Positions 6,625 through 35,007 of a stretch of 64,000 nucleotides of DNA are shown here, in pieces. The stretch covers positions 186,001-250,000 of the IMG/VR virus record IMGVR_UViG_3300036781_000418. The stretch is one strand, 5' to 3'. The notes beneath the pieces are model-generated. The model did no database searches. It was given only the letters and a program-made list of their open reading frames with translations, and was not told the DNA's origin. The position numbers and the translations under genes are program-made. How positions within the stretch are numbered: the first letter of the stretch is position 1; every line of letters begins with the position of its first letter.

Positions 6625-7515
6625 ATGGGTGCAGGAAGTTGGTCACGTGATGACTATGAAACGTATGCGACGACGACGAACTACGTCAAGGCCCCGCGGG
6701 CCGAGGTGTTCCGCAACAACCGCATCGTCGATTCGCTGAATCCGGCGAAGGCGCTGCTGCGCGAAAGCTGCGACAGCGCGGACAACCCCAACGCGACGCC
6801 GGTGATCATCGCCCTCGACGTGACGGGATCGATGGGCGAATACGCCGAGCGCATCGCCAAGCAGGCGCTGCCGAAGATCATGACGAGCATCATCGAGGGC
6901 AAGCCCATCAGCGACCCCCACGTCATGTTCATGGCCTTCTCGGACATCAACACGTCGGCCTACATGGACTCCTTCCAGGTGTCGCAGTTCGAAGCCGACA
7001 TCCGCGTGCTCGAGCAGCTGCGTGAAATCTACCTGGCTGGTGGCGGTGGTGGCAACGCCTCCGAGTCGTACGACCTGCCGTGGTACTTCGCCGGCACCCG
7101 CACGAAGACCGACGCGTTCGAAAAGCGCGGCAAGAAGGGCTTCCTCTTCACGATGGGCGATGAACGTGCACCGTACCAGGCTGTCAGCGCCTCCGACTTG
7201 AACCAAGTCTTCGGCGGCCAGCATGAAACCTTCATGCCAATTGAAGCCCTGGCACGGGCCAAGGAGAAGTACAACGTCTTCCACATCGTCATCGAGCAGG
7301 GCAGCGGCTGGCGCAACGACGAGACCGCCATCAAGCAGACATGGAACGCGATGCTTGGCTCCAACGTCCTGTACCTCCGCGACTTCACCCTCCTGCCCGA
7401 GGTGATCACCGCCACGATGCGCATGACCGACGGCTCGGTCACGATCAACGACGTGCTGGCTGAGTCCACCGACCGCCAGGAACTGGCCCACTGCTTCCAG
7501 AACATCCTGGGTTAA
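6625..7515 (+). CDS. vWA (MIDAS) domain protein
   Basis: IIALDVTGSMG (DxTxS), GGGGNASESY, FLFTMGDE. Confidence 0.85.
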   Translation: MGAGSWSRDDYETYATTTNYVKAPRAEVFRNNRIVDSLNPAKALLRESCDSADNPNATPVIIALDVTGSMGEYAERIAKQALPKIMTSIIEGKPISDPHVMFMAFSDINTSAYMDSFQVSQFEADIRVLEQLREIYLAGGGGGNASESYDLPWYFAGTRTKTDAFEKRGKKGFLFTMGDERAPYQAVSASDLNQVFGGQHETFMPIEALARAKEKYNVFHIVIEQGSGWRNDETAIKQTWNAMLGSNVLYLRDFTLLPEVITATMRMTDGSVTINDVLAESTDRQELAHCFQNILG

Positions 7516-7535: not shown

Positions 7536-8750
7536 ATGAAAACAGCTTACGTAGTGATCGGCGCCGGCTTCGGCGATGAAGGCAAGGGTTTGATCACCGA
7601 CTACCTCACACGGCGTAGTGGTGGACGAGCGGTTGCTCGCTTCAACGGTGGCGCACAAGCTGGACACACCGTCCAGCTGCCCAACGGGGTGCGCCACGTC
7701 TTTGGACACTACGCGTCTGGCACCTTGGCCAACGCTAACACGATCCTGTCGAACAAGTTCATCGTCAACCCGTTCCTCCTGAAGAAGGAGCACGACGCGC
7801 TGGCGAAGATCACGAAGGGCCGCACCCAAGTCGCCGCGATGGCTGGAGCTCGGGTGACGACCTTCTACGACATGGTCCTCAACCAGCTTAAGGAACGCGC
7901 CCGCGGTAACGACCGCCACGGTTCCTGTGGCTGTGGCATCAACGAGACGGTCACCCGCCACGAAGAGCTTCCGCTTCGCGTCGGTGACCAGGTGTCGGAG
8001 TTCTACGCCGTCCACAAGGCGATGGCCGTCAAGCTCCACAACTACGTTGAGGCGAACAACCTCGACTGGCAAGCACTTGTCCGTGAAAACGGCTCGTTGG
8101 AGCTGGATCCGATCACGCACGCCTGGTCTGCCTACTCGACCATCCAAGACCTGATCGTCAAGGTCTCCGATCGACCAGCCCACCACCTGGTGCCGTCGGT
8201 CTTTGAAGGTGCGCAGGGCCTGATGCTCGACGAACACCTTGGCGCCTTTCCACACGTGACCCGCTCGATGACGGGCCTGCCGCAGGCGGTCGCCGCCGCG
8301 ATGGACATGGGTGTGGATCACCTGATTCCGGTGTACGTCACCCGAGCCTACTCCACGCGCCACGGTGCCGGGTTGTTCAAGTACGAGGACCAGCCGATCT
8401 CCGACGGCTTCGTCTTCGTCGACCCCACCAACGTGGACAACGAGTGGCAAGGCTCGATCCGCAAGGCCCCACTCCGACTTGGTCAACTCCAGCACTTCAT
8501 CGGTTCCGACCTGGTGCGTGGTGAACGGATCGCCGAAGCGTGTGGCGTCACCCTTGGCAAAGCCCAGCTTGCCGTCACGTGCCTTGACCAGCTCGGTCCA
8601 AACGTGAACGTGATCGACATGTTTGGCGAAGTGCTGGACATCAAGACCGAAACCCTCCACAACGTCATCGCGACGGTCTGTGCGTTGGAACCCTTCTTGC
8701 TCAGCTACGGTCCCACCAACCAGGATGTTCGAGTGGCGCCTCGCGTTTAG
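7536..8750 (+). CDS. purA: adenylosuccinate synthetase-like protein (divergent PurA clade)
   Basis: GAGFGDEGKG, RFNGGAQAGHT, FEGAQG, PHVTRS, TRHGAG. Confidence 0.8.
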   Translation: MKTAYVVIGAGFGDEGKGLITDYLTRRSGGRAVARFNGGAQAGHTVQLPNGVRHVFGHYASGTLANANTILSNKFIVNPFLLKKEHDALAKITKGRTQVAAMAGARVTTFYDMVLNQLKERARGNDRHGSCGCGINETVTRHEELPLRVGDQVSEFYAVHKAMAVKLHNYVEANNLDWQALVRENGSLELDPITHAWSAYSTIQDLIVKVSDRPAHHLVPSVFEGAQGLMLDEHLGAFPHVTRSMTGLPQAVAAAMDMGVDHLIPVYVTRAYSTRHGAGLFKYEDQPISDGFVFVDPTNVDNEWQGSIRKAPLRLGQLQHFIGSDLVRGERIAEACGVTLGKAQLAVTCLDQLGPNVNVIDMFGEVLDIKTETLHNVIATVCALEPFLLSYGPTNQDVRVAPRV

Positions 8751-8844
8751 AATGAAGTATGAGGTAAGTTTGTCGTCCACCTCGTTAAGGACGACTTGAC
8801 CGACGCGACCGACGCTTAGGTCCTATGGATAGAGAGGTTCTACC

Positions 8845-10377
8845 ATGCAGACAATTATTCCCAAGAACGACGTCCTCGACGCCTCCAGAATGCGTCGTCG
8901 CGCCACCCCCGCCAAGCCACCGTTGCGCTTCAACATGGTGCTAGCCGCGGACTCCTACAAGTTCTCCCACCCGTTCTCGTACCCCAAGAACATCAGCGGC
9001 TTGTTCTCGTACATCGAGGCCCGGACACATGGTGCACACATCATGATTCCGGCCGGCTTCGAGGCCACGTTGCAGCGCTACCTGTCGGTGCCCATCACGA
9101 TGGAGGACATCGACGAGGCCGAGGCCTTCATGAAGCGCCACGGCGAACCGTTCGCCCGGAACGTCTGGGAGCACGTCCTCACCAAGTACCACGGCTACCT
9201 GCCCGTGATCATCCGTGCCGTGCCTGAGGGAACTCCCGTCAAGAGCAGCAACATCATGGTGTCGATCATGTGCGTCGACGAGCTGGTCGCCGAGAACATC
9301 TTCTGGCTGGCCTCCTTCCTTGAGACCTTCCTGCTCCGTGCCGTCTGGTACCCTACCACGCTGGCCACCAACGATTACGAGTCGAAGCTCGAGATCAAGC
9401 GCTTCTACAAGATTGCCGGTGAGGACCTTGCCGGCATCGACTTCGCCGTCCACTGCTTTGGCGCTCGAGGTACGACCTGTCACGAGCAAGCCGAGATCGC
9501 CGGTGTCCACGCCTTCATGTACAAGGGCTCGGACACGGTTGAGGGCATTCGCTACGTCAACCACTACTACGACTGCGAGATGGCCGCGTTCTCCGTGCCC
9601 GCCACCGAACACTCGGTCGCCACGTCGTTCGGGCTGACGAGTGAAGACGAAGTCCGCTACATCGACCATCAGCTGACGGCGTTCGCGAAGCAAGGTGCGA
9701 TCATCTCGCTGGTGGCCGACTCCAAGGACACGTCGCGCTTCGTGGATCACATCTGCACGACGTTCCATGACCGCATCGTCGACCTCCATGAACGGCTTGG
9801 TGTGAAGGTTGTCGTCCGTCCAGACAGCGGCGATCCGCTTGAGATCGTGCCGATGATCTTGGACAAGCTGGCCAAGGCCTTCCCGACCACTCGCACCGTG
9901 CACGGCTACATCAAACTGTACGGCGGCGTTGGTATCCTACAAGGTGACGGCGTCGACACCATGCTGATCAAGACGTTGCTCGGCAACATCATGGCCCGCA
10001 ACTACTCGCCTGCAAACATCATCTTCGGTTCGGGCGGTGCGCTCCTGCAGAAGGTTAACCGTGACACGCACAAGTGGGCGCAGAAGGGCAGCGCCATCTT
10101 GGTGAGGACTCCTGTCGCGGTCGGCGCGCACGGTGGCACCTTCACGTACGCGTGGCAAGGCATCGCCAAGGACCCCATCACCGACCCTGGCAAGAAGTCG
10201 AAGGAAGGTCTCCTGACCCTGATGCGGAACTCCTTCACCGGCCAGTACGCCACCATCCGCATCGACAAGGATCCGGTGAAAGACGAGTGGGTGGACGTGA
10301 TGGAGGACATCTACGACTGTGGACAGTTCTTCAACCTGTCCAACATGGACCAAATCCGCACACGCTGCGCCATCTGA
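8845..10377 (+). CDS. nadV: nicotinamide phosphoribosyltransferase (NAMPT)
   Basis: ADSYKFSH, SYIEAR, VWYPTT, FGARG, VPATEHS, VVRPDSGDP, LQGDG, FGSGGALLQKVNRDT, KDPITDPGKKSK. Confidence 0.93.
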   Translation: MQTIIPKNDVLDASRMRRRATPAKPPLRFNMVLAADSYKFSHPFSYPKNISGLFSYIEARTHGAHIMIPAGFEATLQRYLSVPITMEDIDEAEAFMKRHGEPFARNVWEHVLTKYHGYLPVIIRAVPEGTPVKSSNIMVSIMCVDELVAENIFWLASFLETFLLRAVWYPTTLATNDYESKLEIKRFYKIAGEDLAGIDFAVHCFGARGTTCHEQAEIAGVHAFMYKGSDTVEGIRYVNHYYDCEMAAFSVPATEHSVATSFGLTSEDEVRYIDHQLTAFAKQGAIISLVADSKDTSRFVDHICTTFHDRIVDLHERLGVKVVVRPDSGDPLEIVPMILDKLAKAFPTTRTVHGYIKLYGGVGILQGDGVDTMLIKTLLGNIMARNYSPANIIFGSGGALLQKVNRDTHKWAQKGSAILVRTPVAVGAHGGTFTYAWQGIAKDPITDPGKKSKEGLLTLMRNSFTGQYATIRIDKDPVKDEWVDVMEDIYDCGQFFNLSNMDQIRTRCAI

Positions 10378-12172: not shown

Positions 12173-12574
12173 ATGACCTGGGCTCGACGTCACCACAACG
12201 GCTACGAGTGCTCGTCCAAGGGCGACCGCCGGTTCTCGGCCTTCTACGCGAAGCTGCCTGACGGCCGCTCGATCGAGGAAGCCTACCAGCTCGACGTCAA
12301 GGGTTACCGCGCCAAGGGCGACGACGCGAAGCTTGGCAAGGGTAAGCCGCCTTTGAACGGCAAGTCGCGTGAGGTGCTCTGGGAAGAGTACCTCGCCCTC
12401 TGGAAGGTGTGGGCTGAGCATCACCTGAACGACTTGGTCGACCTTTGCATGCTCCAGCGAGTTCACGTGCTGACTGATCAGTTCGCGACCTCGTCAATCA
12501 ACCAAGCTCGCGCCCTGGACTTCATCTGTGAAGAGGTCTGGGCCGCGGTGAACAATGAACCTTTTACCCTATGA
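12173..12574 (+). CDS. phage protein, possibly NADAR-like fold
   Basis: YECSSKGDRRFSAFYA..IEEAYQLDVKG..LTDQFA..INQARAL; ATG 12173 overlaps the stop of a 53 aa ORF at 12015-12176. Confidence 0.5.
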   Translation: MTWARRHHNGYECSSKGDRRFSAFYAKLPDGRSIEEAYQLDVKGYRAKGDDAKLGKGKPPLNGKSREVLWEEYLALWKVWAEHHLNDLVDLCMLQRVHVLTDQFATSSINQARALDFICEEVWAAVNNEPFTL

Positions 12575-12861
12575 ACACGCTCTCAACGTTGATCTTTGGC
12601 GACGCTCGACTTGAACTTGACGTCATTGAGTCGCTTGACAGTCGAGTTTTCTCAAGAATGTGCGACCACAGCGGCCGCACCGTGGTCACGTTATCCTGCA
12701 AAGGGCTGGGTGCCGGTCATTACTTTGTGGACGGTGACGTGCTGTCCACCAGCGTCACGCTACACAAGCTCCACAACGACAACTTGGTGTTTCCGTCAGG
12801 TAAGATTCTGACCTCGTACAGCCTCGAAGGCACGGTTAAAGAGGTCAAACTGCGTAAATAG
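12571..12861 (+). CDS. hypothetical protein
   Basis: ATGA-coupled ORF. Confidence 0.5.
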   Translation: MNTLSTLIFGDARLELDVIESLDSRVFSRMCDHSGRTVVTLSCKGLGAGHYFVDGDVLSTSVTLHKLHNDNLVFPSGKILTSYSLEGTVKEVKLRK

Positions 12862-12911
12862 ATCCTGACTAACTTGGTGTACGCGTAGCGTCGCCGAGTT
12901 AGAATGTACCT

Positions 12912-13205
12912 ACCATGTCGAAAGACACGGTGATTGTCGTAATTCGGCTTGAGTTGATGAGGGTAACACGGGGGTTCAACTCCCCCCAGCTCCACCAAAA
13001 GGGTTTACTGGAATCTTTCTGATGGGGCTGAACGGGTAATCGACTACGCTACTGAAATGATAGACGCGACATGCAAGGCGATCTGCACCGATGATGTTTG
13101 TCGGAAAGAAGCAAAATCTTTAAATGCTAACAACAGCGTTTACGCTCTCGCCGCTTAAAAACCGTGCGCAGCTGGGGCCGATCGCCTTATAATCCAAAGA
13201 TCACT
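12912..13205 (+). ncRNA. ssrA: circularly permuted (two-piece) tmRNA, tag ANNSVYALAA*
   Basis: T-arm plus CAGCTCCACCA (ends 12997) lies upstream of the GGGGCTG 5' end (13024); G3-U70 pair; resume codon GCT at 13126 after TAAAT; TAA at 13156-13158; outer ends approximate. Confidence 0.92.
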
Positions 13206-13229
13206 CAAGGGGCTTCGGCCCCTTGTTTT
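13206..13229 (+). terminator. intrinsic terminator of tmRNA
   Basis: CAAGGGGC-TTCG-GCCCCTTG-TTTT. Confidence 0.85.
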
Positions 13230-13303
13230 ATGCCCAGACCCAAACAATCTGTTGGCGTAAAACCGTAAATAGTCTATGATGCCTCCATTGGTCGAGGCAC
13301 CCC

Positions 13304-13732
13304 ATGTTTATCAAAGTCGCGCTAGCAGCTCTTACCTTCAGCTCCCTTGCGGTCGCGAGTCTCGTGACGCAACCTGAAGACAACTACCTTTCCGTCGCCA
13401 AGTCGCCGGACCTGGAGTTCACGATTGATAAACGAACGATGGTGGTCGACGTCGAGACCACCTCCTTCGAGTTCGACCTCCACACCAAGTTCGCTCATCC
13501 GATCGAGTACAAGGGTAAGGGTGCGACGGAGGTCGTTGAGCGGACGCTCGTAATGTGTCACGAGCAGGCCATGGTCACGTTGAAGCAGCGAGTCCTGGAC
13601 GAAGACGGCGGTCTGATCGACCAGCGTGACACCTCCAAAATTTACCCGTACGCCAAGCCCGGGTTTCACCGTCAACTCCTGCAGTTCTTCTGCGCCCCTG
13701 CGGAAAAGCGTAAGCCGGACACCACCGTCTGA
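13304..13732 (+). CDS. secreted/periplasmic hypothetical protein
   Basis: N-terminal signal peptide; TAAATA at 13266; GAGG RBS. Confidence 0.65.
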   Translation: MFIKVALAALTFSSLAVASLVTQPEDNYLSVAKSPDLEFTIDKRTMVVDVETTSFEFDLHTKFAHPIEYKGKGATEVVERTLVMCHEQAMVTLKQRVLDEDGGLIDQRDTSKIYPYAKPGFHRQLLQFFCAPAEKRKPDTTV

Positions 13733-13792: not shown

Positions 13793-13869
13793 GACTCCAT
13801 AGCTCAGTTGGTTAGAGCAGCGGCCTTCAAAGCCGCCGGTCCTCGGTTCGAGCCCGAGTGGAGCCACCA
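13793..13869 (+). tRNA. tRNA with UCA anticodon (opal-reading), copy 1
   Basis: GACTCCA/TGGAGCC-ACCA acceptor; anticodon arm GCGGC-CTTCAAA-GCCGC; canonical D and T arms; short variable loop. Confidence 0.88.
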
Positions 13870-13928
13870 AATGTCGTCGTCCGTGGATGCGACGGATCAG
13901 GAGCTGTTGGCCTGAACTTTAGTCCATT

Positions 13929-14005
13929 GCGCCCATAGCTCAGCGGTCCAGAGCAACTTGCTTCAAACTTGTTGGTCCTCGGTTCGAATCCGAGTGGGCG
14001 CACCA
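13929..14005 (+). tRNA. tRNA with UCA anticodon (opal-reading), copy 2
   Basis: GCGCCCA/TGGGCGC-ACCA; anticodon arm ACTTG-CTTCAAA-CTTGT with two U-U mismatches. Confidence 0.78.
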
Positions 14006-29460: not shown

Positions 29461-29534
29461 CAGAGTGTGGTGCCAAGTGGACGGCGACCTGCTTTGGAGA
29501 CAGGAACATGTCGGTTCGAGGCCGACCGCTCTGA
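29461..29534 (+). tRNA. tRNA-Pro(UGG), atypical, no encoded CCA
   Basis: CAGAGTG/CGCTCTG-A; TTTGGAG loop; weak D arm. Confidence 0.55.
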
Positions 29535-29732
29535 CAAAGCACATCTAGCGAGAACCCAAGTGCAAGGTTAGCCAAGCACAACGGTGCGATAGAATGCATT
29601 CATGCAAGTTGATGTTGAAGTTTGACATCGACAAAACAACTGAGGCCTTGCTTCAGTGACCTACCTCGGTAGGTACGCTCATTAAAAATTTGACGTGACA
29701 TCTAGTCCAAGGGCACCAACCCTTGGACATCT

Positions 29733-29806
29733 GCGCCCATAGCTCAATGGTAGAGTATCGCTTTGACATGGCGATTACGAAGGTTCGATTCCTTCTGGGC
29801 GCACCA
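29733..29806 (+). tRNA. tRNA-Val(GAC)
   Basis: TCGCT-TTGACAT-GGCGA; CCA encoded. Confidence 0.9.
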
Positions 29807-29809
29807 TTG

Positions 29810-29957
29810 TTCATAAACCCAAGAGTTACCGCTTGCAATCGGTTATCTACTTTAACTTGGTGTAAAAACCCGGAGTGCGGTTCGAGTCCGCACAACGCCC
29901 ATACTGGCTTCGGGGGCAATCTCCGAGAGCTACTTTTGTTGCTCTTGGGTTTATGAA
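29810..29957 (+). ncRNA. Y-RNA-like element A
   Basis: 16 bp outer stem TTCATAAACCCAAGAG/CTCTTGGGTTTATGAA; TACCG-N9-GGTTATC; internal T-arm GTGCGG-TTCGAGT-CCGCAC. Confidence 0.65.
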
Positions 29958-29966
29958 TTTTTCTGT

Positions 29967-30052
29967 GTGGACATGACTGAGAGGCTGAAGGTGACGGGCT
30001 GTAACCCCGTTCTGTAAAAAGCGCGTAGGTTCGAATCCTACTGGCCACACCA
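29967..30052 (+). tRNA. tRNA-Tyr(GUA)
   Basis: ACGGG-CTGTAAC-CCCGT; long variable arm; CCA. Confidence 0.9.
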
Positions 30053-30061
30053 AGTTTAGAT

Positions 30062-30135
30062 GCGGGATTCGTATAGTGGTATTACCTCAGCCTTCCAAGC
30101 TGATGATGAGGGTTCGATTCCCTTATCCCGCTCCA
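30062..30135 (+). tRNA. tRNA-Gly(UCC)
   Basis: TCAGC-CTTCCAA-GCTGA; U73-CCA. Confidence 0.93.
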
Positions 30136-30150
30136 CATTAAGAGGCTTGA

Positions 30151-30618
30151 ATGGCTAGAGGAAGAATTGAAGTCTCACGTGAGCAACTCCTCCAAGCAAT
30201 TGAATCGACAGATTCTGCCGTTCAAGCTTCTAAGCAGTTAGGATTGATGTACACCACGTTTATTCGCAGGTGTAAAGAGCATCAACTATATGCTCCAAAT
30301 CAAGGTGGTAAAGGAACTCAAAAACCTCGACCACAGATGAAAATCGCTCTTGAGGATATCTTCAACGGTAAACATTTGATGGATTCAAAAGCCATTAAAC
30401 GGAAACTGTTTGAAGCAGGTCTTAAGAAAGAAGAATGCGAGTGTTGTGGAATAGGTCCAGTGTGGAATGGCAAGAAGCTTACGCTTCAGCTTGACCACAT
30501 TGATGGAGATCGAACTCACAATGCTTTTGAGAATCTGAGAATTCTCTGCCCTAACTGTCACACTCAGACAGCCACATTTAGTAAGGGTAAAAATAGGACA
30601 CATGCGTCTGTGGCGTAA
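30151..30618 (+). CDS. HNH endonuclease (free-standing, homing-type)
   Basis: CECCG..LQLDHIDGDRTHNAFENLRILCPNCHTQT; AT-rich; stop lies inside the downstream tRNA-Leu. Confidence 0.9.
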   Translation: MARGRIEVSREQLLQAIESTDSAVQASKQLGLMYTTFIRRCKEHQLYAPNQGGKGTQKPRPQMKIALEDIFNGKHLMDSKAIKRKLFEAGLKKEECECCGIGPVWNGKKLTLQLDHIDGDRTHNAFENLRILCPNCHTQTATFSKGKNRTHASVA

Positions 30619-30689
30619 TTGGTAGCCGCGCTAGGTTGAGGGCCTAGTCCTATAATGGGGTGCAGGTTCGAGTCCTGTCAGACGCACCA
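30604..30689 (+). tRNA. tRNA-Leu(GAG)
   Basis: CTAGG-TTGAGGG-CCTAG; long variable arm; ACCA. Confidence 0.9.
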
Positions 30690-30696
30690 TGTTTTT

Positions 30697-30771
30697 GGGG
30701 GAGTACCTCAGTGTTAGAGGGCCCGCTTTTTAAGCGGAAAGTCGAAGGTTCAACTCCTTCCTCCCCCACCA
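30697..30771 (+). tRNA. tRNA-Lys(UUU)
   Basis: CCCGC-TTTTTAA-GCGGA; ACCA. Confidence 0.85.
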
Positions 30772-30775
30772 GTTT

Positions 30776-30891
30776 GAGAACCGTCGTTGATTGGTTATCG
30801 GAAAAGTCAGGGGTGCTTAAACCCCAGGATGAGCATGGTTCAAGCCCGTGCACCCTCGCAAGAGGTTTTACCGATCTGCATTTTTGTTCTC
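30776..30891 (+). ncRNA. Y-RNA-like element B
   Basis: GAGAAC/GTTCTC outer stem; AACCG-N9-GGTTATC; internal T-arm-like GCATGG-TTCAAGC-CCGTGC. Confidence 0.6.
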
Positions 30892-30901
30892 TCCGTTTTC
30901 C

Positions 30902-30996
30902 GACGAACCGTCGTCGAAGGGTTATCTAGTTCACGACTAAAGGGCGCGTATGTGTCCGGCTGCAGAAGCCATCACCCTTCACATCATTTGTTTGTC
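30902..30996 (+). ncRNA. Y-RNA-like element C
   Basis: GACGAAC/GTTTGTC and GAAGGGT/ACCCTTC stems enclosing three small hairpins; AACCG-N9-GGTTATC. Confidence 0.65.
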
Positions 30997-31000
30997 ACTT

Positions 31001-31075
31001 GGGCTTCTAGTATAGGGGGAATTACTACTGTCTTGCACGCAGTGAATCGGGGTTCGAGTCCCCGGAGGTCCACCA
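31001..31075 (+). tRNA. tRNA-Ala(UGC)
   Basis: ACTGT-CTTGCAC-GCAGT; G3-U70; ACCA. Confidence 0.9.
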
Positions 31076-31084
31076 AGTTTTAAT

Positions 31085-31161
31085 CGGAGTGTAGCGCAGT
31101 CTGGTAGCGCATCTGCTTTGGGAGCAGAGGGTCCCAGGTTCGAATCCTGGTACTCCGACCA
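31085..31161 (+). tRNA. tRNA-Pro(UGG)
   Basis: CGGAGTG; TCTGC-TTTGGGA-GCAGA; ACCA. Confidence 0.95.
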
Positions 31162-31221
31162 CGTTTTCGCACGGCACGGATGACCGTTATCATCCACACT
31201 ACTACGACTACAAGGAACTAA

Positions 31222-31509
31222 ATGGTACACGTAAAGATCATGTCCGGTGAGGACACGCACGATTCTTACCCAGGTAAGAACTACACGCTGATCACAGTCA
31301 ATGACCGAGATCGGATTCAGTTCGGCGAATGGGGTTCGCTCTTCGGTAACCCAGCCAACACAGCTGACGATCGCGGTGGAAACACCGAGGTGATGATCGT
31401 GATTCGCGAGAAGAGTTCAGAGCAGGAGACGTACCCGCTGTTGGGGAACGTCTACATCATGAACGATCAAGGTAAGACGATTGCGACTCGCCAGAAGAGC
31501 ATCAATTAA
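31222..31509 (+). CDS. hypothetical protein
   Basis: AAGGA RBS; 95 aa between tRNAs. Confidence 0.65.
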   Translation: MVHVKIMSGEDTHDSYPGKNYTLITVNDRDRIQFGEWGSLFGNPANTADDRGGNTEVMIVIREKSSEQETYPLLGNVYIMNDQGKTIATRQKSIN

Positions 31510-31516
31510 GAACAAC

Positions 31517-31624
31517 GCGGACGTAGCTCAGTTGGATTAGAGCTCGGCACACAAAACAAAGGCGGCCGGCTTGCCGATCAGTAGTGTGACGCGGTCAGAG
31601 GTTCGAGCCCTCTCGTACGCACCA
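31517..31624 (+). ncRNA. tRNA-like RNA with an expanded anticodon loop
   Basis: Normal acceptor, D and T arms with ACCA; CACAC/GTGTG stem closes a ~31 nt loop with no 7-nt anticodon loop. Confidence 0.7.
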
Positions 31625-31806
31625 AACGCGGACTCTCCCTGCTCACAGCGCTCGGAACGCCCATACAACCCATGGAAGAGCTCCTAGCTAGTACCTAGAG
31701 GCGGACTTTCGGCATCACTTAAAAACTGGTGCGGTTGGTGGTTAGCTTGTATGGTGCTCCCTGAGTAAAGAGGACCCGACCGGACAAGTCGCAAAACTGT
31801 TCCGAT

Positions 31807-31882
31807 GCAGGGGTAGCTCAGTTGGTAGAGTACTTGTTTGCCAAGCAAGACGTCGCGGGTTCGAACCCCGTTCCCTGCTCCA
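31807..31882 (+). tRNA. tRNA-Gly(GCC)
   Basis: CTTGT-TTGCCAA-GCAAG; TCCA. Confidence 0.93.
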
Positions 31883-31888
31883 AATTTT

Positions 31889-31978
31889 GGACACTTGGCC
31901 GAGAGGCTTAAGGCACCGGTCTTGAAAACCGACGGGCCCTTACGGGTCCCGTGAGTTCGAATCTCACAGTGTCCGCCA
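31889..31978 (+). tRNA. tRNA-Ser(UGA)
   Basis: CCGGT-CTTGAAA-ACCGA; long variable arm; GCCA. Confidence 0.92.
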
Positions 31979-31983
31979 GAACA

Positions 31984-32045
31984 TAGCAACCGCACGTGCA
32001 GGGTTATCATCCATTCGCTCTCCCTGTACAACCTCTTTGTTGCTA
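31984..32045 (+). ncRNA. minimal Y-RNA-like element D
   Basis: TAGCAAC/GTTGCTA and GTGCAGGG/CCCTGTAC stems; pyrimidine-rich loop; AACCG-N9-GGTTATC. Confidence 0.65.
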
Positions 32046-32056
32046 GTATTTCAGTT

Positions 32057-32180
32057 AGGGATGTCGTCCAGTGGTAGGACAGCCGCCTCAACGTCGTGAA
32101 TGACATCTTTAGTTGCGCAAGTAACCGCCGCTTCATGGTTATCCAAGCAGCTTACGTGGGTTCGATCCCCACCATCCCTA
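32057..32180 (+). ncRNA. tRNA (Gly-like) with the Y-type stem inserted in the anticodon loop
   Basis: AGGGATG/CATCCCT; D and T arms intact; ~53 nt insert AAC..CTTTAGTTGC-GCAA-GTAACCG-N9-GGTTAT. Confidence 0.7.
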
Positions 32181-32224
32181 ACCCCTTGACTTCAAGGGAA
32201 AGTATCCATTGGGTTCTTTCCTTT

Positions 32225-32354
32225 GGGGTCGTAGTGTAGTGGACAGCACGTTAACATCGATTGCTCCCTTTGTTGGACTTTGAATCCAACCGCTCGTGAT
32301 TGGTTATCTTTCTACAAAAAGACAGGATGGGTTCGAATCCCATCGACTCCACCA
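32225..32354 (+). ncRNA. tRNA-like RNA (G3-U70, ACCA) with the Y-type stem inserted 5' of the anticodon arm
   Basis: GGGGTCG/CGACTCC-ACCA; insert TAAC..CTTTGTTGGA-CTTTGAA-TCCAACCG-N9-GGTTA. Confidence 0.7.
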
Positions 32355-32367
32355 AAATTCTTTCCAT

Positions 32368-32496
32368 GCAGTCTTGGCGTAACGGTAGCGCGCGAACAGT
32401 CGTTCGCATCTTTAGTTGTCGCAAGGCAACCGTTCGTGAATGGTTATCTAAAGTACAAAGACGAGGTCCGTGGTTCAATTCCCGGGGACTGCACCA
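32368..32496 (+). ncRNA. tRNA-like RNA (ACCA) with the Y-type stem inserted in the anticodon stem
   Basis: GCAGTCT/GGACTGC-ACCA; insert AAC..CTTTAGTTGTC-GCAA-GGCAACCG-N9-GGTTA. Confidence 0.7.
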
Positions 32497-32564
32497 ACTA
32501 TTGGAGACGACAATGACAAACGAGAAAGGGCGATTGTGTTAGGTTAACTACACAAGGAGCCCAA

Positions 32565-32942
32565 ATGAGCCGAACCTTTCGGTGCAAGAACTACGAAGAC
32601 ACGCAGAACACGAGCTGGGACCGTCAAGGTCGCAAGATCGGTGGTTTCTACTGCGAGTACAGCTACGCGAACGAAGTCTACGACAGCAACCTTCACTGGG
32701 GCTGGCGGTACGTGCACATCTTTCGCCCTCCAACTCAGGAGGAGCTGATCAAGGCGTACTGGCGGAACCACGGCGAAAGCCGACACCGCTGCGCTCGCTC
32801 TCCCAGTCGGTACCACCGCGGCACGAGGATGGCGGAGAATCGTCGAATCAACAACCAGGAGCTGCATAAGTTCCTGAAGAACCCAGATCACGAGCCGATG
32901 CTCGAGGCCAACCCTCGAAACTGCTGGTGGGACTGGAGCTGA
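32565..32942 (+). CDS. hypothetical basic protein
   Basis: AAGGAG RBS; 125 aa. Confidence 0.7.
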   Translation: MSRTFRCKNYEDTQNTSWDRQGRKIGGFYCEYSYANEVYDSNLHWGWRYVHIFRPPTQEELIKAYWRNHGESRHRCARSPSRYHRGTRMAENRRINNQELHKFLKNPDHEPMLEANPRNCWWDWS

Positions 32943-33048
32943 TTTTCCGTTGTGAGCCTTGATCGGCCAAAGTCGCTGACTTATACGGAACCTGTGCAGC
33001 CTCATCAGCTGCACCGTGGTGACCATGGACAGTCACCGATCATTCAAC

Positions 33049-33135
33049 GCGGGTGTGGCGAAATTGGTGGCCGCGCTAGGTTTAGGTCCTAGTGGATTTA
33101 CATCCTTGCAGGTTCGAATCCTGTCACCCGTACCA
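33049..33135 (+). tRNA. tRNA-Leu(UAG)
   Basis: CTAGG-TTTAGGT-CCTAG; long variable arm; ACCA. Confidence 0.92.
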
Positions 33136-33299
33136 GTTTGGGGAGCATGGTTAGCGCCGTGTTCAGGCTAGCTTGGCCAAGCGGTTTAGTAGCGGACGGC
33201 CGTTCGCGAGCGACTTAGAGATGATGGTAGTGCTGTTCGACTCAGCGCCATCGAAAGCCACCCAAAACCCATAAATACTCCATACGTTTTGGAGTAGCC

Positions 33300-33629
33300 A
33301 TGAAGGTTGCACAGTTGTTCGAAGAGCTGAAAGCCTACACAGGTGGTCGGCTTTCAAAGACTCTCGAGAATGCAATGTTGGAGTTCTGCGATGCGTTTGA
33401 CATCGACAGCTTCTCGGTCTCAACTGAGAAGTTTCATCAGCCGCATCCAACTAAAGGTTGGAGCGATACGGTAAACGTGAAGAACTTCTTCATCAACATG
33501 GGGACTGAAAAGAACGCGACGCTGTTGAAACGGTACTTGAAGGACAAGGGCTTTGGAGTCGAAGATCGATACCGCCCTGAACATGTCGTCAATACTTGGA
33601 ACGTTCCAAAGAAGTTCAAGTCAAAGTAA
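33300..33629 (+). CDS. hypothetical protein with MKVAQLFEE N-terminus
   Basis: TAAATA at 33272; GGAG RBS. Confidence 0.7.
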   Translation: MKVAQLFEELKAYTGGRLSKTLENAMLEFCDAFDIDSFSVSTEKFHQPHPTKGWSDTVNVKNFFINMGTEKNATLLKRYLKDKGFGVEDRYRPEHVVNTWNVPKKFKSK

Positions 33630-33632
33630 CAC

Positions 33633-33720
33633 GCGTCGTGACCCTACATCGGTCTTCTAAGCCGATGACGAAAAAGAGTAGGATGGACGTCCACGGGTTC
33701 GATTCCTGCACGCCGCTCCA
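33633..33720 (+). ncRNA. D-arm-less tRNA-Arg(UCU)-like RNA
   Basis: GCGTCGT/ACGCCGC-TCCA; ATCGGT-CTTCTAA-GCCGAT nested in a CCTAC/GTAGG stem; T-loop TTCGATT. Confidence 0.55.
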
Positions 33721-33738
33721 TAACACAGAGGACCGATC

Positions 33739-34101
33739 ATGATTTTGCTTGAGTACCCCGACAACAAGAGCGCCCGCCAACACCTTACCTTGGGTAAGGA
33801 CTACGCGGTCGTTCGAGAGCTTGGCAACGGTCTCGTGATCGAGGCCGACAACTCAACTCCTGAGTCGCCCAACTTTCACACGCTGTTGGCTTCACGCTTC
33901 AAGGAAGTCGGTGTTGTGGTAAACCGTGACTGCACGAAAGCGAAGCCGATGCCGTTGGAGCTTGGACCGAGAGCGGTCGAGCTCAACATCATCTGGGACC
34001 ATGATGACATTGAAGACCTAGCTCCCGACCTTGACTCACGTTACGCCCACTTCAAGTGTGGTTCATGTGGGCACGATTGGTGGGCGGATTTAGGCGATTA
34101 A
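33739..34101 (+). CDS. hypothetical protein with C-terminal CxxC
   Basis: GAGGA RBS; KCGSCGHDW. Confidence 0.65.
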   Translation: MILLEYPDNKSARQHLTLGKDYAVVRELGNGLVIEADNSTPESPNFHTLLASRFKEVGVVVNRDCTKAKPMPLELGPRAVELNIIWDHDDIEDLAPDLDSRYAHFKCGSCGHDWWADLGD

Positions 34102-34104
34102 CTT

Positions 34105-34192
34105 GGAGATGTGGCAGAGTGGCCTATCGCACAACCTTGGAAAGGTTGAGGACTTTATCGTCCCATGGGTTCGAATCCCATCATCTCCTCCA
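34105..34192 (+). tRNA. tRNA-Ser(GGA)
   Basis: CAACC-TTGGAAA-GGTTG; long variable arm; CCA. Confidence 0.9.
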
Positions 34193-34198
34193 GACAGA

Positions 34199-34276
34199 AG
34201 CAGGGTAGCTCAGCCAGGTAGAGCGCTGGTCTCATAAGCCAGAGGTCGTGGGTTCAAATCCCTCCCGTTGCAACCA
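34199..34276 (+). tRNA. tRNA-Met/Ile2(CAU)
   Basis: CTGGT-CTCATAA-GCCAG; imperfect acceptor stem; ACCA. Confidence 0.75.
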
Positions 34277-34357
34277 ACACGTGGACCCTTGTTCACGGTA
34301 CAGCGACCGTAGCGTCGCAGTAGAATTGACTCATCAACAACGCATTGGACCGATGCT

Positions 34358-34669
34358 ATGCAACACAAGATGAACCAACTGATGCGTGTCAGCAAGACAC
34401 TTGGTTTCACTGAGTTCGCGTTTCCACTCGAACTCACGTACGGTCCAGCCTACGACGGCTACTGGATTGATCGAGTTGGACGTCTCTTTTCCACCAAGCG
34501 TGGTGAAGTTACGCCGCTGATCGCCAAGTGCACGGCCTTCGTCAAGGGCAACAGCTACGGCCTCATCATCCGTGGTAAGAACAAGTCGGTCTCTGGAACC
34601 GAACTGCTCCATGAACTGCGCAGCTCGCCCGAATGGCCGGTGCTGCTCGAACAATGGGGCAACATGTAA
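34358..34669 (+). CDS. hypothetical protein
   Basis: ORF between tRNAs; TAGAAT upstream. Confidence 0.55.
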   Translation: MQHKMNQLMRVSKTLGFTEFAFPLELTYGPAYDGYWIDRVGRLFSTKRGEVTPLIAKCTAFVKGNSYGLIIRGKNKSVSGTELLHELRSSPEWPVLLEQWGNM

Positions 34670-34675
34670 GATCAT

Positions 34676-34761
34676 GCGCATGTGGTGTAATTGGTAGCCA
34701 CACTTCTCTCAAAAGGAAGCGTCCGTAGGGCGTGTCGGTTCGAGTCCGACCATGCGCACCA
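34676..34761 (+). tRNA. tRNA-Leu(CAA)
   Basis: CTTCT-CTCAAAA-GGAAG; ACCA. Confidence 0.92.
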
Positions 34762-34893
34762 GGTGAGACCCCCGAAGTGACTAGGACGCGAGGCGGTCAT
34801 CGAGTAGAGGCGGCCACGGAATCGTGGCGGTAAGTAGTGAACACAACCTCCTCTACCGACCAGTGAGGTGACTGGATGAGAAAGCAGGGTTAA

Positions 34894-34993
34894 ACGCACT
34901 GATGAGCTGGTGAGAGTCCAGCGAAACGGGAAGGTGAACAGCCGATCGAGCGCTAGGTCGCGGCTCTCGACGCAGTATCCTTTCCGTATGCGT
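34894..34993 (+). ncRNA. type I hammerhead ribozyme
   Basis: Stem I ACGCA/TGCGT; core CTGATGA; stem II GCTGG/CCAGC; GAAA; stem III CGGGAAGG/CCTTTCCG; GTA cleavage triplet ending at 34988. Confidence 0.85.
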
Positions 34994-35007
34994 AAATAGA
35001 AACATAT

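What the first reader, a model, noticed from the sequence alone, without database searches (positions are those of the whole stretch)
12912..13229. Phage-encoded circularly permuted two-piece tmRNA
Seen: the acceptor piece (T-arm, CAGCTCCACCA ending 12997) precedes a 26-nt intervening hairpin and the coding piece (GGGGCTG at 13024, tag ANNSVYALAA, terminator). Known: permuted tmRNAs occur in Alphaproteobacteria, some cyanobacteria and a betaproteobacterial lineage. A phage copy is unusual and may be either captured or independently permuted.
Basis: partly seen in the sequence, partly recalled or inferred. Interest (0 to 1): 0.7.

Follow-up and report, generated by a model that had tools for sequence, protein, structure and literature searches.

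The report
Two-piece tmRNA gene in huge phage
A 343-kb soil phage carries a real, apparently working copy of the bacterial ribosome-rescue RNA (tmRNA) in its rearranged two-piece form; the gene came from Azoarcus-like bacteria and is shared by a clade of huge phages, so it is a new example of something already known, not a new kind of thing.

Summary
Window 12886-13232 (+) holds a circularly permuted tmRNA gene in this order: T-arm, CAGCTCCACCA ending at 12997, a 26-nt spacer hairpin, GGGGCTG at 13024, tag ANNSVYALAA, terminator.

- **Detection:** ARAGORN calls it. Rfam beta_tmRNA scores 113.9 bits (cut-off 84) over the full model; the alpha, cyano and standard models all fail.
- **Genome:** a complete 342.6-kb phage with terminal repeats, 40 tRNAs and no SmpB.
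- **Relatives:** seven further lineages of 315-350-kb phages carry the same gene. Across the eight sequences, 21 of 48 base pairs show compensatory changes, G3·U never changes, and every tag frame is intact.
- **Spacer:** it ranges from 26 to 584 nt, and one holds a GIY-YIG homing-endonuclease gene. This is indirect evidence that the spacer is removed.
- **Origin:** the phage clade is sister (99/98) to the tmRNAs of the Azoarcus MAG's bacterial family and shares their spacer design. That points to one old capture, not an independent permutation.
- **Novelty:** phage two-piece tmRNAs are published, including one in the relative XacN1, so this is a new member of a known kind.
- **Untested:** no RNA data were available, so processing is not shown.
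- **Side finding:** nonsense-suppressor tRNAs usually sit beside the gene, here two tRNA(UCA) in a genome whose commonest stop is TGA.

The parts
12877..12905 (+). Promoter-like element: weak -35-like GTGTAC (12877-12882), a 17-nt spacer, and -10-like TAGAAT (12900-12905). It predicts a transcript start near 12912.
   Evidence: TAnAAT sits at the same position in all clade members: TAGAAT, TAAAAT, TACAAT, TATAAT. The consensus scanner did not list it because the -35 is weak. This part is inferred.
12913..12930 (+). 5' hairpin of the acceptor piece with a GAAA tetraloop. Relatives have a GCAA tetraloop.
   Evidence: The helix 12911-12916/12927-12932 is 90% canonical, with 4 covarying pairs of which 3 are compensatory, across 8 sequences.
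12935..12966 (+). 5' strands of helix P2 on the acceptor piece. They pair with 13044-13050 and 13066-13071 on the coding piece and so hold the two RNAs together.
   Evidence: From the Rfam alignment. The outer helix 12935-12940/13066-13071 is 100% canonical with 3 compensatory pairs. The inner helix 12960-12966/13044-13050 is 93% canonical with 5 compensatory pairs. The window's own copy has 2 mismatches in the inner helix.
12970..12986 (+). T-arm: a 5-bp stem and the loop UUCAACU.
   Evidence: The stem is 100% canonical with 2 compensatory pairs.
12987..12997 (+). 3' strand of the acceptor stem (12987-12993), discriminator A (12994) and an encoded CCA (12995-12997). This is the 3' end of the acceptor piece.
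   Evidence: The stem has 7 bp. U12991 pairs with G13026, giving the G3·U pair that is invariant in all 8 clade sequences.
12998..13023 (+). 26-nt intervening spacer. It forms a hairpin whose two ends pair and stack on the acceptor stem, and it is predicted to be removed during maturation.
   Evidence: Fold. Spacer length is 26 to 584 nt in the clade and about 13 to 147 nt in the cultured relatives. L120 has a GIY-YIG gene in its spacer. Bacterial beta genes have the same stem design.
13024..13043 (+). 5' end of the coding piece: the 5' strand of the acceptor stem GGGGCUG (13024-13030; the predicted RNase P cut is before G13024) and the D-loop-like segment AACGGGUAAUCGA.
13044..13071 (+). 3' strands of helix P2 on the coding piece.
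13072..13125 (+). Region between P2 and the resume codon, where PK1 is expected. It contains small hairpins at 13088-13104 and 13105-13121. A full pseudoknot could not be resolved in this copy.
   Evidence: One helix at 13078-13083/13093-13097 has 5 covarying pairs, 4 of them compensatory, in the clade alignment. This region differs most among relatives.
13126..13158 (+). Tag reading frame: resume codon GCU, peptide ANNSVYALAA, stop TAA.
   Evidence: ARAGORN. Intact tag frames are present in all relatives.
13172..13204 (+). Pseudoknot after the tag (PK2-like). Stem 1 is 13172-13178 with 13184-13190. Stem 2 is GAUC 13180-13183 with GAUC 13199-13202.
   Evidence: Stem 1 is 96% canonical with 3 compensatory pairs. 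Stem 2 corresponds to the Rfam beta hairpin and changes in a compensatory way among the sequences; I read that by eye.
13206..13231 (+). Intrinsic terminator: an 8-bp G+C-rich hairpin followed by UUUUAU. This is the 3' end of the coding piece.
   Evidence: Each relative has an equivalent hairpin.
13793..14005 (+). Two tandem tRNA(UCA) genes of opal-suppressor type (13793-13869 and 13929-14005). They are neighbours of the tmRNA and only possibly part of one functional module.
   Evidence: ARAGORN and Rfam tRNA at 64.2 and 62.5 bits. Relatives carry tRNA(CUA) in the equivalent place.

Best explanation
This is a functional ssrA gene of the betaproteobacterial two-piece type, carried by a 342.6-kb soil huge phage related to the jumbo phages RsoM2USA and XacN1.

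Proposed mechanism, with each step marked as shown or inferred:

1. The gene is its own transcription unit of about 320 nt, running from a conserved -10-like box to an intrinsic terminator. The terminator is shown; the promoter is inferred.
2. In the precursor, the acceptor-piece sequence comes first and the coding-piece sequence second. They are joined by a 26-nt hairpin that stacks on the acceptor stem (shown by sequence and folding).
3. Host RNase P cuts before G13024, and host 3'-end enzymes trim back to CCA12997. That releases the spacer and leaves two RNAs held together by the 7-bp acceptor stem and helix P2. This step is inferred from how bacterial two-piece tmRNAs mature and from the free variation in spacer length.
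4. Host alanyl-tRNA synthetase charges the RNA through the G3·U pair. Host SmpB and EF-Tu then deliver it to ribosomes stalled on broken mRNAs (inferred; the phage has no SmpB).
5. Translation resumes at GCU13126 and appends ANNSVYALAA. This tag ends in YALAA, the same C-terminus as the E. coli degradation tag, so the stalled products would go to host proteases (inferred).

The likely benefit is a larger free ribosome pool and cleared truncated products during a long infection in which mRNAs are being degraded. The phage's 40 tRNA genes fit the same logic.

The gene was captured once from a bacterium close to the Azoarcus MAG's family, before this phage clade diversified. It has been kept under selection since.
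For: **Identity**
- ARAGORN calls a permuted tmRNA with a tag.
- RF01850 scores 113.9 bits against a cut-off of 84 over the full model, and RF04321 scores 105.8.
- Alpha scores 20.6 (local match only), cyano 31 and the standard model 30.1, all below their cut-offs.

**Phage context**
- The record is 342,591 bp with terminal repeats and is rated 100% complete.
- It has 40 tRNAs and a TerL with Terminase_6N and 6C domains.
- The TerL is 45.9% identical to that of Ralstonia phage RsoM2USA and 42% to XacN1.
- No SmpB was found.

**Selection for function**
- The same gene occurs in seven further lineages: L084, G001/G004, G002, G003, L120, L167 and L169. Their flanks are in the same gene order at 58-64% amino-acid identity.
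- Across the 8 sequences there are 48 consensus pairs, 96.8% canonical. 21 have compensatory double changes, against 1-4 when the 3' partners are shifted.
- G3·U is invariant, while acceptor position 5 occurs as G-C, C-G and U-A.
- All tags are intact, start with AN and end in hydrophobic-A/V-A: ANDSQIRVAA, ANSDSFRLVA, ANDSQFAIAA, ANEANYRMAA, ANDANFRIAA, ANESSFRLAA and ANDDSFGALRLAA.

**Spacer is dispensable**
- Spacer lengths are 26, 30, 32, 39, 74, 88, 96 and 584 nt. The 584-nt spacer carries an intact GIY-YIG/NUMOD3 gene between two conserved halves.

**Capture**
- Bacterial beta genes have the same spacer stem design.
- The phage clade is monophyletic (100/98). Together with 12 genes of the Azoarcus MAG's family it forms a 99/98 group.

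**Background**
- Two-piece maturation by RNase P and tRNase Z, and the usual retention of PK1 and PK2, are described in Himeno et al. 2014, PMC3985003.
Against: - No RNA evidence exists. Only one DNA run from a soil metagenome holds the locus, and no RNA run was listed. Transcription, cleavage into two pieces, charging and tagging are therefore all unobserved.
- The window's copy is the most divergent of its clade. Its terminal branch is 0.58, its best identity to another member is 65%, and it has a low Rfam score for the clade (only G002, at 110.9, is lower).
- It has 2 mismatches in the inner P2 helix, a D-loop-like segment with an insertion, and no clear PK1.
- No canonical sigma-70 promoter was found by the scanner.
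- The host is unknown, so compatibility with its SmpB cannot be assessed.
- The benefit to the phage is conjecture.
Confidence: 0.8

Rival explanations
1. Subversion instead of rescue. The phage RNA competes with the host tmRNA for SmpB and stalled ribosomes. It would either dampen host trans-translation or attach a phage-chosen tag with a different fate, for example to spare phage products or to mark host proteins for recycling.
For: - The phage has no SmpB, so it must draw on the host pool.
- A tRNA-like-domain-only phage molecule (mycobacteriophage DS6A) inhibits tmRNA when expressed in E. coli (PMC4131195; PMC11915505).
- Tag C-termini vary within the clade (RLVA, RVAA, RMAA, RIAA, AIAA) and some depart from the canonical LAA.
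- Buchholz et al. also raise selective tagging of host proteins as a possibility.
Against: - The window's tag ends in YALAA, a canonical degradation ending.
- The full messenger part (resume codon, frame, stop) is conserved in all lineages. A pure decoy would not need it.
- Nothing in the data separates a tag with a changed fate from ordinary tagging.
Confidence: 0.1
2. This phage's copy is decaying. The clade's gene works, but the window's version has lost function and survives only as a recognisable remnant.
For: - It has the longest branch in the clade (0.52-0.58).
- Its RF01850 score is 113.9, against 130-173 in most relatives.
- There are mismatches in P2 and in the 5' hairpin.
- The D-loop-like segment is altered and PK1 is unresolved.
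Against: - Every element that is individually essential is intact: a 7-bp acceptor stem with G3·U, the T-arm, an encoded CCA, the resume codon, a 10-codon frame with a canonical ending, PK2 stem 1 and the terminator.
- The fold z-score is -3.4.
- Many of the changes relative to the clade are compensatory, which is not what decay produces.
Confidence: 0.06
3. Independent permutation. A standard one-piece tmRNA gene was rearranged within the phage lineage, and its likeness to the beta type is convergent.
For: Permuted genes arose separately in three bacterial lineages, so the rearrangement can recur (reviewed in PMC3985003 and PMC11915505).
Against: - The match to the beta model is full-length. 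It includes lineage-specific parts outside the tRNA-like domain, such as the post-tag pseudoknot with its CCUUAUAA..AAAG loop.
- The discarded spacer has the same stem design and similar end sequences as in the bacterial genes.
- The phage clade and one bacterial family form a 99/98 group within a wider beta group.
Confidence: 0.02
4. Not a phage gene at all. It is host DNA on a chimeric contig, or the tmRNA-derived part of an attachment site.
For: tmRNA genes are common integration sites, and fragments of them occur in prophages (PMC4383910 listed). Some IMG/VR contigs with permuted tmRNAs are short and could be host flanks.
Against: - The gene is complete, not a 3' fragment.
- It lies mid-genome, at 198.9 kb of a 342.6-kb record with terminal repeats.
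- Its neighbours are phage-type or unknown genes.
- It sits at the syntenic place in seven other huge-phage lineages.
Confidence: 0.02

Closest known systems
Betaproteobacterial two-piece tmRNA (Rfam RF01850; Sharkady & Williams 2004, as cited in PMC9004378 and PMC3985003), for example the gene of the Azoarcus sp. MAG JAISSY010000045.1
   Same: - The gene order is the same: acceptor piece, spacer, coding piece.
- It has a 7-bp acceptor stem with G3·U.
- P2 holds the two pieces together.
- The tag has the form AN....AA.
- It has the post-tag pseudoknot with a CCUU..AAAG loop, and a terminator.
- The spacer forms a stem stacked on the acceptor stem.
- It aligns full-length to the model above the cut-off, and the phage clade is the sister group in the tree.
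   Different: - It scores 113.9 bits, against 240-305 for most full-length bacterial genes (lowest 160-169).
- It has an extra 5' GNRA hairpin.
- CCA is always encoded in the phage genes, whereas several bacterial genes end in CCT or CCC.
- The PK1 region is divergent.
- It is carried by a virus with no SmpB of its own.
Permuted tmRNAs of cultured jumbo phages: Xanthomonas phage XacN1, Ralstonia phage RsoM2USA and Xanthomonas phage Xoo-sp13
   Same: - They belong to a related phage group: the TerL proteins are 39-46% identical.
- All carry permuted tmRNAs. XacN1 scores 123.2 on RF04321 and 107.8 on RF01850, RsoM2USA scores 96.7 and 92, and Xoo-sp13 scores 65.7 on RF04321.
- Their tags are ANANTFDYALAA, ANDSRYAVAA and ...DSFDFAMAA.
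- In XacN1 and Xoo-sp13, tRNA(CUA) genes are the nearest upstream tRNA genes.
- XacN1 is listed as 'Permuted' in Buchholz 2022 Table S1.
   Different: - Their tmRNAs do not group with the window's clade in the tree. XacN1 and Xoo-sp13 form their own branch within the wider beta group, and RsoM2USA is unresolved. The family may therefore have acquired or replaced the gene more than once, or the RNAs may have diverged beyond what 255 columns can resolve.
- Their spacers are about 13 to 147 nt.
- The genes are not annotated in GenBank and are not mentioned in the genome papers.
Two-piece tmRNA of marine phages such as Methylophilales phage Melnitz and the pelagimyophages (Buchholz et al. 2022, PMC9004378)
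   Same: These are phage-borne, permuted and complete ssrA genes without a phage SmpB. The lineage of the tmRNA there, as here, records a past or present host class.
   Different: Melnitz carries an alpha-type gene with a glutamine riboswitch in its 3' part, in a 141.5-kb marine phage. The window's gene is beta-type, Rfam finds no riboswitch in it, and it sits in a 343-kb soil phage.
One-piece phage tmRNAs (mycobacteriophage Bxz1 group, Bacillus phage G) and the tRNA-like-domain-only molecule of phage DS6A (PMC4131195)
   Same: These are phage-encoded components of the trans-translation system.
   Different: They are not permuted. DS6A also lacks a tag frame and acts as an inhibitor, whereas the window's gene has a complete tag frame.

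Membership tests
tmRNA (ssrA) in general | A tRNA-like domain: a 7-bp acceptor stem with the G3·U alanine identity pair, a T-arm, a discriminator base and a 3' CCA. | tested here: met
   The stem is 13024-13030 paired with 12987-12993, with G13026·U12991. The T-arm is 12970-12986 and ACCA is 12994-12997. G3·U is invariant in the clade and the other stem positions covary.
tmRNA (ssrA) in general | A messenger-like part: a resume codon, a short tag frame ending in a hydrophobic-Ala-Ala motif, and a stop codon. | tested here: met
   13126-13158 encodes ANNSVYALAA plus a stop. The frame is intact in all 8 clade lineages and in 3 cultured relatives.
tmRNA (ssrA) in general | A pseudoknot (PK1) between helix P2 and the resume codon. 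| tested here: inconclusive
   The window has only hairpins at 13088-13104 and 13105-13121, plus one clade-supported helix at 13078-13083/13093-13097. I found no second stem.
tmRNA (ssrA) in general | Acts together with SmpB, is charged with alanine, and tags stalled nascent chains. | not testable with these tools
   The phage genome has no SmpB, so a host SmpB would be required. No RNA or proteome data were available.
Circularly permuted (two-piece) tmRNA | Permuted gene order: the acceptor (3') piece lies upstream of the coding (5') piece on the same strand, separated by a spacer. | tested here: met
   The CCA ends at 12997 and G1 is at 13024. ARAGORN flags the gene as permuted. RF04321 scores 105.8 bits against a cut-off of 47.
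Circularly permuted (two-piece) tmRNA | The precursor is cleaved into two RNAs that stay base-paired. | not testable with these tools
   No RNA run was listed. Indirect support comes from spacers of 26 to 584 nt between conserved halves, including a homing-endonuclease gene in L120, and from covarying inter-piece helices.
Beta-type two-piece tmRNA (RF01850) | A full-length match to the lineage-specific model above its gathering score, and better than to the other lineage models. | tested here: met
   It scores 113.9 bits against a cut-off of 84 over positions 1-331. Alpha scores 20.6 (cut-off 50), cyano 31 (cut-off 70) and the standard model 30.1 (cut-off 47).
Beta-type two-piece tmRNA (RF01850) | Shared descent with the bacterial beta-type genes. 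| tested here: met
   The best non-clade hits of the clade profile are bacterial beta genes at 73-84 bits. In the tree, the phage clade plus 12 genes of the Azoarcus MAG's family group at 99/98, inside a wider beta group at 98/97. The tree rests on 255 columns and has only a midpoint root.
Alpha-type (RF01849) and cyanobacterial (RF01851) two-piece tmRNA | A match to the lineage model above its gathering score. | tested here: not met
   Alpha scores 20.6 bits and matches only the T-arm and acceptor part. Cyano scores 31 bits.
tRNA-like-domain-only phage decoy (DS6A type) | It lacks a tag reading frame. | tested here: not met
   A complete tag frame is present and conserved.
Attachment-site fragment of a host tmRNA gene | Only the 3' part of the gene is present, next to an integrase, at the edge of an integrated element. 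| tested here: not met
   The gene is complete. It lies mid-genome in a record with terminal repeats, at a syntenic position in related phages. I did not search for an integrase.

The most novel reading that the evidence does not exclude
The tmRNA and the neighbouring nonsense-suppressor tRNAs form one functional module in this group of huge phages. The phage would express suppressor tRNAs that make ribosomes read through stop codons and run to the ends of messages. Its own tmRNA would then rescue those ribosomes and tag the extended products for destruction. The effect could be a host shut-off and recycling device, or a buffer against the cost of suppressors kept for another purpose.

The window's phage would be an anticodon variant of this module, with UCA in place of CUA. 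It is odd because TGA is its own commonest stop codon.
Probability: 0.18. Interest if true: 0.7.

Novelty: new member of a known kind. Interest (0 to 1): 0.4.

Why it matters
**What it adds**
- It is a well-supported case of a ribosome-rescue RNA being kept under selection in huge phages. That fits the picture of large phages carrying their own translation toolkit.
- It extends phage two-piece tmRNAs, so far reported mostly from marine and aquatic phages (50 of the 53 counted), to a clade of 315-350-kb phages from metagenomes (the window's own from soil).
- It shows that the cultured jumbo phages XacN1 and RsoM2USA have unannotated beta-type ssrA genes. Those phages are therefore usable laboratory models.

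**Natural experiments in the clade**
- Spacers range from 26 to 584 nt, and one holds a homing-endonuclease gene. This bears on how permuted tmRNA precursors mature.
- The repeated pairing with suppressor tRNAs suggests a testable link between stop-codon read-through and trans-translation during infection.

**Host history**
- The tmRNA's affinity to Azoarcus-like bacteria gives a hint about past hosts of a phage clade whose present host is unknown.

Tried and rejected
- **No DNA relatives in INPHARED.** blastn and megablast of the locus and of 12 kb around it found nothing.
- **Relatives not offered.** The 'relatives' option is not available for virus records.
- **Protein search failed.** The search for related loci with the neighbouring 177-aa protein found no relative. 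The clade was found with a DNA motif instead.
- **Beta paper not held.** The paper that first described the beta lineage (PMC516066) is not in the library. I took its content only as cited by others.
- **Genome scan too narrow.** The one genome-contig scan gave a single hit, the Azoarcus MAG, because the pattern was too strict. I compensated with order-level and family-level Rfam surveys.
- **No RNA runs.** None were listed.
- **TGA or TAG recoding rejected.** Code 11 gives 91.5% coding coverage, and TGA ends 229 of 437 ORFs. Long in-frame extensions are not enriched after TGA or TAG.
- **TAA read-through rejected.** The apparent excess after TAA is caused by adjacent same-frame genes in the pattern TAA-nnn-ATG.
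- **Long-range pairing rejected.** A perfect 9-bp complement between 13075-13083 and 13180-13188 looked like a long-range helix, but 18% of shuffles give one and relatives lack it.
- **No obvious tRNA ancestor.** The tRNA(UCA) genes are closest to each other (75%) and not clearly derived from any other tRNA of the phage.
- **No sigma-70 promoter.** The scanner found none upstream of the gene.
- **No prior link in the literature.** No paper holds 'suppressor tRNA', 'tmRNA' and 'jumbo phage' together.
Full report
**1. The observation**

- CAGCTCCACCA occupies 12987-12997.
- A 26-nt stretch at 12998-13023 follows it.
- GGGGCTG starts at 13024.
- A frame at 13126-13158 encodes ANNSVYALAA followed by TAA.
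- An 8-bp G+C-rich hairpin at 13206-13225 is followed by TTTTAT.

ARAGORN calls a permuted tmRNA at 12905-13249 with that tag. Rfam gives beta_tmRNA (RF01850) 113.9 bits against a gathering score of 84, E = 6.6e-34, over model positions 1-331. The merged permuted model RF04321 gives 105.8 bits against 47. Co-folding the two pieces recovers the 7-bp acceptor stem with G13026·U12991, the T-arm and the terminator. The predicted primary transcript 12912-13232 folds with z = -3.4, and none of 100 shuffles did as well.

**2. Which kind of tmRNA**

I scored the same genome with the other models.
- The alphaproteobacterial model reaches 20.6 bits, and only on the T-arm and acceptor part.
- The cyanobacterial model reaches 31 bits.
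- The standard one-piece model reaches 30.1 bits.

All three are below their cut-offs. Only the beta model fits, and it fits end to end. The fit includes parts outside the tRNA-like domain: helix P2, the context of the resume codon, a post-tag hairpin with a CCUUAUAA..AAAG loop, and the terminator.

**3. The genome**

- The window is positions 186001-250000 of an IMG/VR virus record of 342,591 bp with direct terminal repeats, rated 100% complete.
- It has 57% G+C, 40 tRNA genes and this one tmRNA.
- It encodes a large terminase with Terminase_6N and 6C domains.
- The nearest cultured relatives of that terminase are all jumbo phages: Ralstonia phage RsoM2USA (45.9% identity, 343.8 kb), Xanthomonas phage XacN1 (42%), then Stenotrophomonas, Xanthomonas and Pseudomonas phages.
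- The only public run that holds the locus is a soil metagenome.
- The tmRNA lies in an intergenic gap between two same-strand ORFs of unknown function, 12571-12861 and 13304-13732. Neither has a Pfam or PHROG match.
- The phage has no SmpB, so any activity depends on the host protein.

**4. A clade of huge phages shares the gene**

A motif from the P2 strand and T-arm found the same type of gene on several contigs.
- IMG/VR contigs of 349.7, 336.1, 331.8 and 234.5 kb.
- Two short IMG/VR contigs, L084 and L120.
- Metagenome contigs of 315.7 kb (L169) and 33 kb (L167).

Together with the window, this makes eight distinct sequences. Their RF01850 scores are 111-173 bits. L084's flanking genes match the window's genome in the same order at 58-64% amino-acid identity, so the locus is inherited within the clade.

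**5. Evidence of selection**

On a spacer-less alignment of the eight sequences, the consensus fold has 48 pairs that are 96.8% canonical.
- 23 pairs show more than one canonical pair type.
- 21 pairs show compensatory double changes, against 1-4 when the 3' partners are shifted by one to three columns.
- The compensatory changes fall in the acceptor stem (position 5 occurs as G-C, C-G and U-A), the T-stem, both P2 helices that join the two pieces, a 5' hairpin with a GNRA loop, one helix in the PK1 region, and stem 1 of the post-tag pseudoknot.
- G3·U never changes.

Every lineage keeps an intact tag frame that starts with Ala-Asn and ends in a hydrophobic residue followed by Ala or Val, then Ala: ANNSVYALAA, ANDSQIRVAA, ANSDSFRLVA, ANDSQFAIAA, ANEANYRMAA, ANDDSFGALRLAA, ANDANFRIAA and ANESSFRLAA. 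A TAnAAT box sits at the same place upstream in all members, and each has a terminator. This is the signature of an RNA that is used both as a tRNA mimic and as a message.

**6. Is it really two pieces?**

No RNA run was listed for this sequence, so cleavage is not shown. The comparative evidence is nevertheless telling.
- The spacer measures 26, 30, 32, 39, 74, 88, 96 and 584 nt in the eight lineages.
- In each case the two ends of the spacer pair into a stem that stacks on the acceptor stem, capped by a loop that varies freely.
- In L120 the spacer holds an intact 190-codon gene for a GIY-YIG/NUMOD3 homing endonuclease, while both tmRNA halves remain conserved at 111 and 162 bits against the clade profile.

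A segment that tolerates a 22-fold change in length and an inserted gene is unlikely to be part of the mature RNA. Maturation of permuted precursors by RNase P and a 3' processing enzyme is the accepted model for bacterial two-piece tmRNAs (Himeno et al. 2014, PMC3985003).

**7. Captured or independently permuted?**

- The bacterial beta-type genes have the same spacer design, with similar end sequences (AAG.GCAU ... GUGUUU.GAU).
- Outside the clade, the best hits of a clade profile are bacterial beta genes: the Azoarcus sp. MAG at 83.6 bits, and others at 82 and 73 bits.
- In a sample of 151 genomes of that MAG's order, only 4 had a beta-type gene above the cut-off. In its family, 14 of 37 did.
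- A maximum-likelihood tree of 37 spacer-less genes (255 columns) gives three results. The eight phage genes are monophyletic (100/98). The 12 genes of the bacterial family are monophyletic (94/90). The two groups join at 99/98, inside a wider beta group at 98/97.

The simplest reading is one capture from a bacterium close to that family before the phage clade diversified. The capture does not come from within the sampled family. Independent permutation is not supported.

There are caveats.

**8. The cultured relatives**

XacN1, RsoM2USA and Xoo-sp13 also carry permuted tmRNAs.

| Phage | RF04321 bits | RF01850 bits | Tag |
|---|---|---|---|
| XacN1 (one copy in each terminal repeat) | 123.2 | 107.8 | ANANTFDYALAA |
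| RsoM2USA | 96.7 | 92 | ANDSRYAVAA (ARAGORN miscalls it) |
| Xoo-sp13 | 65.7 | below threshold | ...DSFDFAMAA |

- The scores come, and the tags.
- RAS14 and PA5oct have no permuted tmRNA.
- The genes are not annotated in the GenBank records, and the genome papers do not mention them (PMC8504454; PMC5852040).
- Their RNAs do not group with the window's clade in the tree. The wider family may therefore have gained or replaced the gene more than once, or the signal may be too weak to tell.

**9. What is already known**

- Buchholz et al. 2022 (PMC9004378) found tmRNA genes in 402 of 18,146 phage genomes. These made 133 distinct structures, 53 of them two-piece, and 50 of those 53 came from marine or aquatic phages.
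- Their Table S1 lists XacN1 (soil) as 'Permuted'.
- Al-Shayeb et al. 2020 (PMC7162821) reported tmRNAs and SmpB in huge phages.
- The 2025 tmRNA database update lists 79 unique bacteriophage tmRNA sequences.
- In my own sample of viral contigs with permuted genes, several others are beta-type: L087 at 180.6 bits, L088 at 166.6, and L045, L052, L073 and L094.

The finding is therefore a new member of a known kind. The new elements are the clade, the donor affinity, the spacer series with a homing-endonuclease gene, and the unannotated genes in cultured phages.

**10. Mechanism and rivals**

The best explanation is ordinary trans-translation with host partners, serving to keep ribosomes free during infection (confidence about 0.8).

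| Rival | Confidence |
|---|---|
| Competition with or re-direction of host tagging | about 0.1 |
| Decay of this particular copy, which is the most divergent of its clade | about 0.06 |
| Independent permutation | about 0.02 |
| Host DNA or an attachment-site fragment | about 0.02 |

**11. Side observation: suppressor tRNAs**

Two tandem tRNA(UCA) genes lie 0.55-0.7 kb downstream of the tmRNA, at 13793-13869 and 13929-14005, and 15 kb from the main tRNA arrays. In the relatives the equivalent place holds tRNA(CUA).

| Lineage | tRNA(CUA) relative to the tmRNA |
|---|---|
| L084 | about 1.1 kb downstream |
| G002 | two copies, 0.5 kb downstream |
| G003 | 2.9 kb downstream |
| L167 | 0.5 kb downstream |
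| L169 | 1.9 kb downstream |
| XacN1 | two copies, 1 kb upstream; the nearest tRNA genes on that side |
| Xoo-sp13 | 2.2 kb upstream; the nearest tRNA gene on that side |
| G001/G004, L120, RsoM2USA | none nearby |

The genome is not recoded.
- Code 11 gives 91.5% coding coverage.
- TGA ends 229 of 437 ORFs.
- Long in-frame extensions are not enriched after TGA or TAG.
- The excess after TAA comes from adjacent same-frame genes.

An opal suppressor in a genome whose commonest stop is TGA remains unexplained. The XacN1 authors likewise found no targets for its amber suppressors. Read-through caused by suppressor tRNAs is known to feed trans-translation in E. coli (Ueda et al. 2002, as cited in PMC3985003). 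A functional link between the two kinds of gene is therefore possible. It is unproven, and because the arrangement is largely inherited it amounts to few independent events.

Noticed in passing
window 13793-13869 and 13929-14005: Two tandem 77-nt tRNA genes with anticodon UCA (opal-suppressor type, CCA encoded) lie just downstream of the tmRNA and 15 kb from the main tRNA arrays. The genome uses the standard code, and TGA is its commonest stop (229 of 437 ORFs), so these tRNAs would read through many of the phage's own stops. Their role is unexplained.
   Followed up: partly
L084 11222-11297; L135 (G002) 9112-9270; L134 (G003) 6861-6936; L167 995-1070; L169 8002-8077; L186 (XacN1) 8648-8806; L185 (Xoo-sp13) 7592-7667: In most related phages the tRNA gene nearest the tmRNA is an amber-suppressor type tRNA(CUA), downstream in the window's clade and upstream in XacN1 and Xoo-sp13. 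TAG stops are rare there: 0 of 36 ORFs in L135, and the XacN1 paper counts 18 amber stops. The window's phage has UCA in place of CUA.
   Followed up: partly
L120 6428-7000 (+): An intact 190-codon GIY-YIG/SegE plus NUMOD3 homing-endonuclease gene sits inside the 584-nt spacer between the acceptor and coding pieces of a permuted tmRNA gene. I found no report of a free-standing endonuclease gene in that position.
   Followed up: partly
L177 2840-3253 (Xanthomonas phage XacN1, AP018399.1, about 38570-38983): A GOLLD RNA (RF02032, 227.3 bits against a cut-off of 150) lies about 1 kb downstream of the XacN1 tmRNA, inside the tRNA island of the terminal repeat. No GOLLD match was found in the window.
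   Followed up: no
MG752970.1 about 331650-331960; AP018399.1 about 37177-37621 and a second copy near 356000: The beta-type permuted tmRNA genes of the cultured jumbo phages RsoM2USA and XacN1 are not annotated in their GenBank records and are not mentioned in the genome papers. ARAGORN also miscalls the RsoM2USA tag; the plausible tag is ANDSRYAVAA.
   Followed up: yes
window 29461-37367 and 51518-51593; G000 253642-259459: The phage carries 40 tRNA genes in two large arrays. Several are unusually long or carry odd anticodon-loop positions, and Rfam finds extra tRNA-like matches of 105-124 nt (for example 32057-32180 and 31517-31621) that ARAGORN does not call. These may be intron-containing or degenerate tRNA genes.
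   Followed up: no
window 8845-10377 (+): A nicotinamide phosphoribosyltransferase gene (phrog_448, E = 1.8e-114) lies 2.5 kb upstream of the tmRNA. It is an NAD-salvage auxiliary gene.
   Followed up: no
L191, L194, L195 (bacterial genomes G190, G170, G180): In three bacterial beta-type genes my extraction found only about 4 nt between the CCA and the 5' end of the coding piece. If this is real, the precursor's acceptor stem is closed by a very short loop. I did not check whether it is an artefact of the extraction rule.
   Followed up: no
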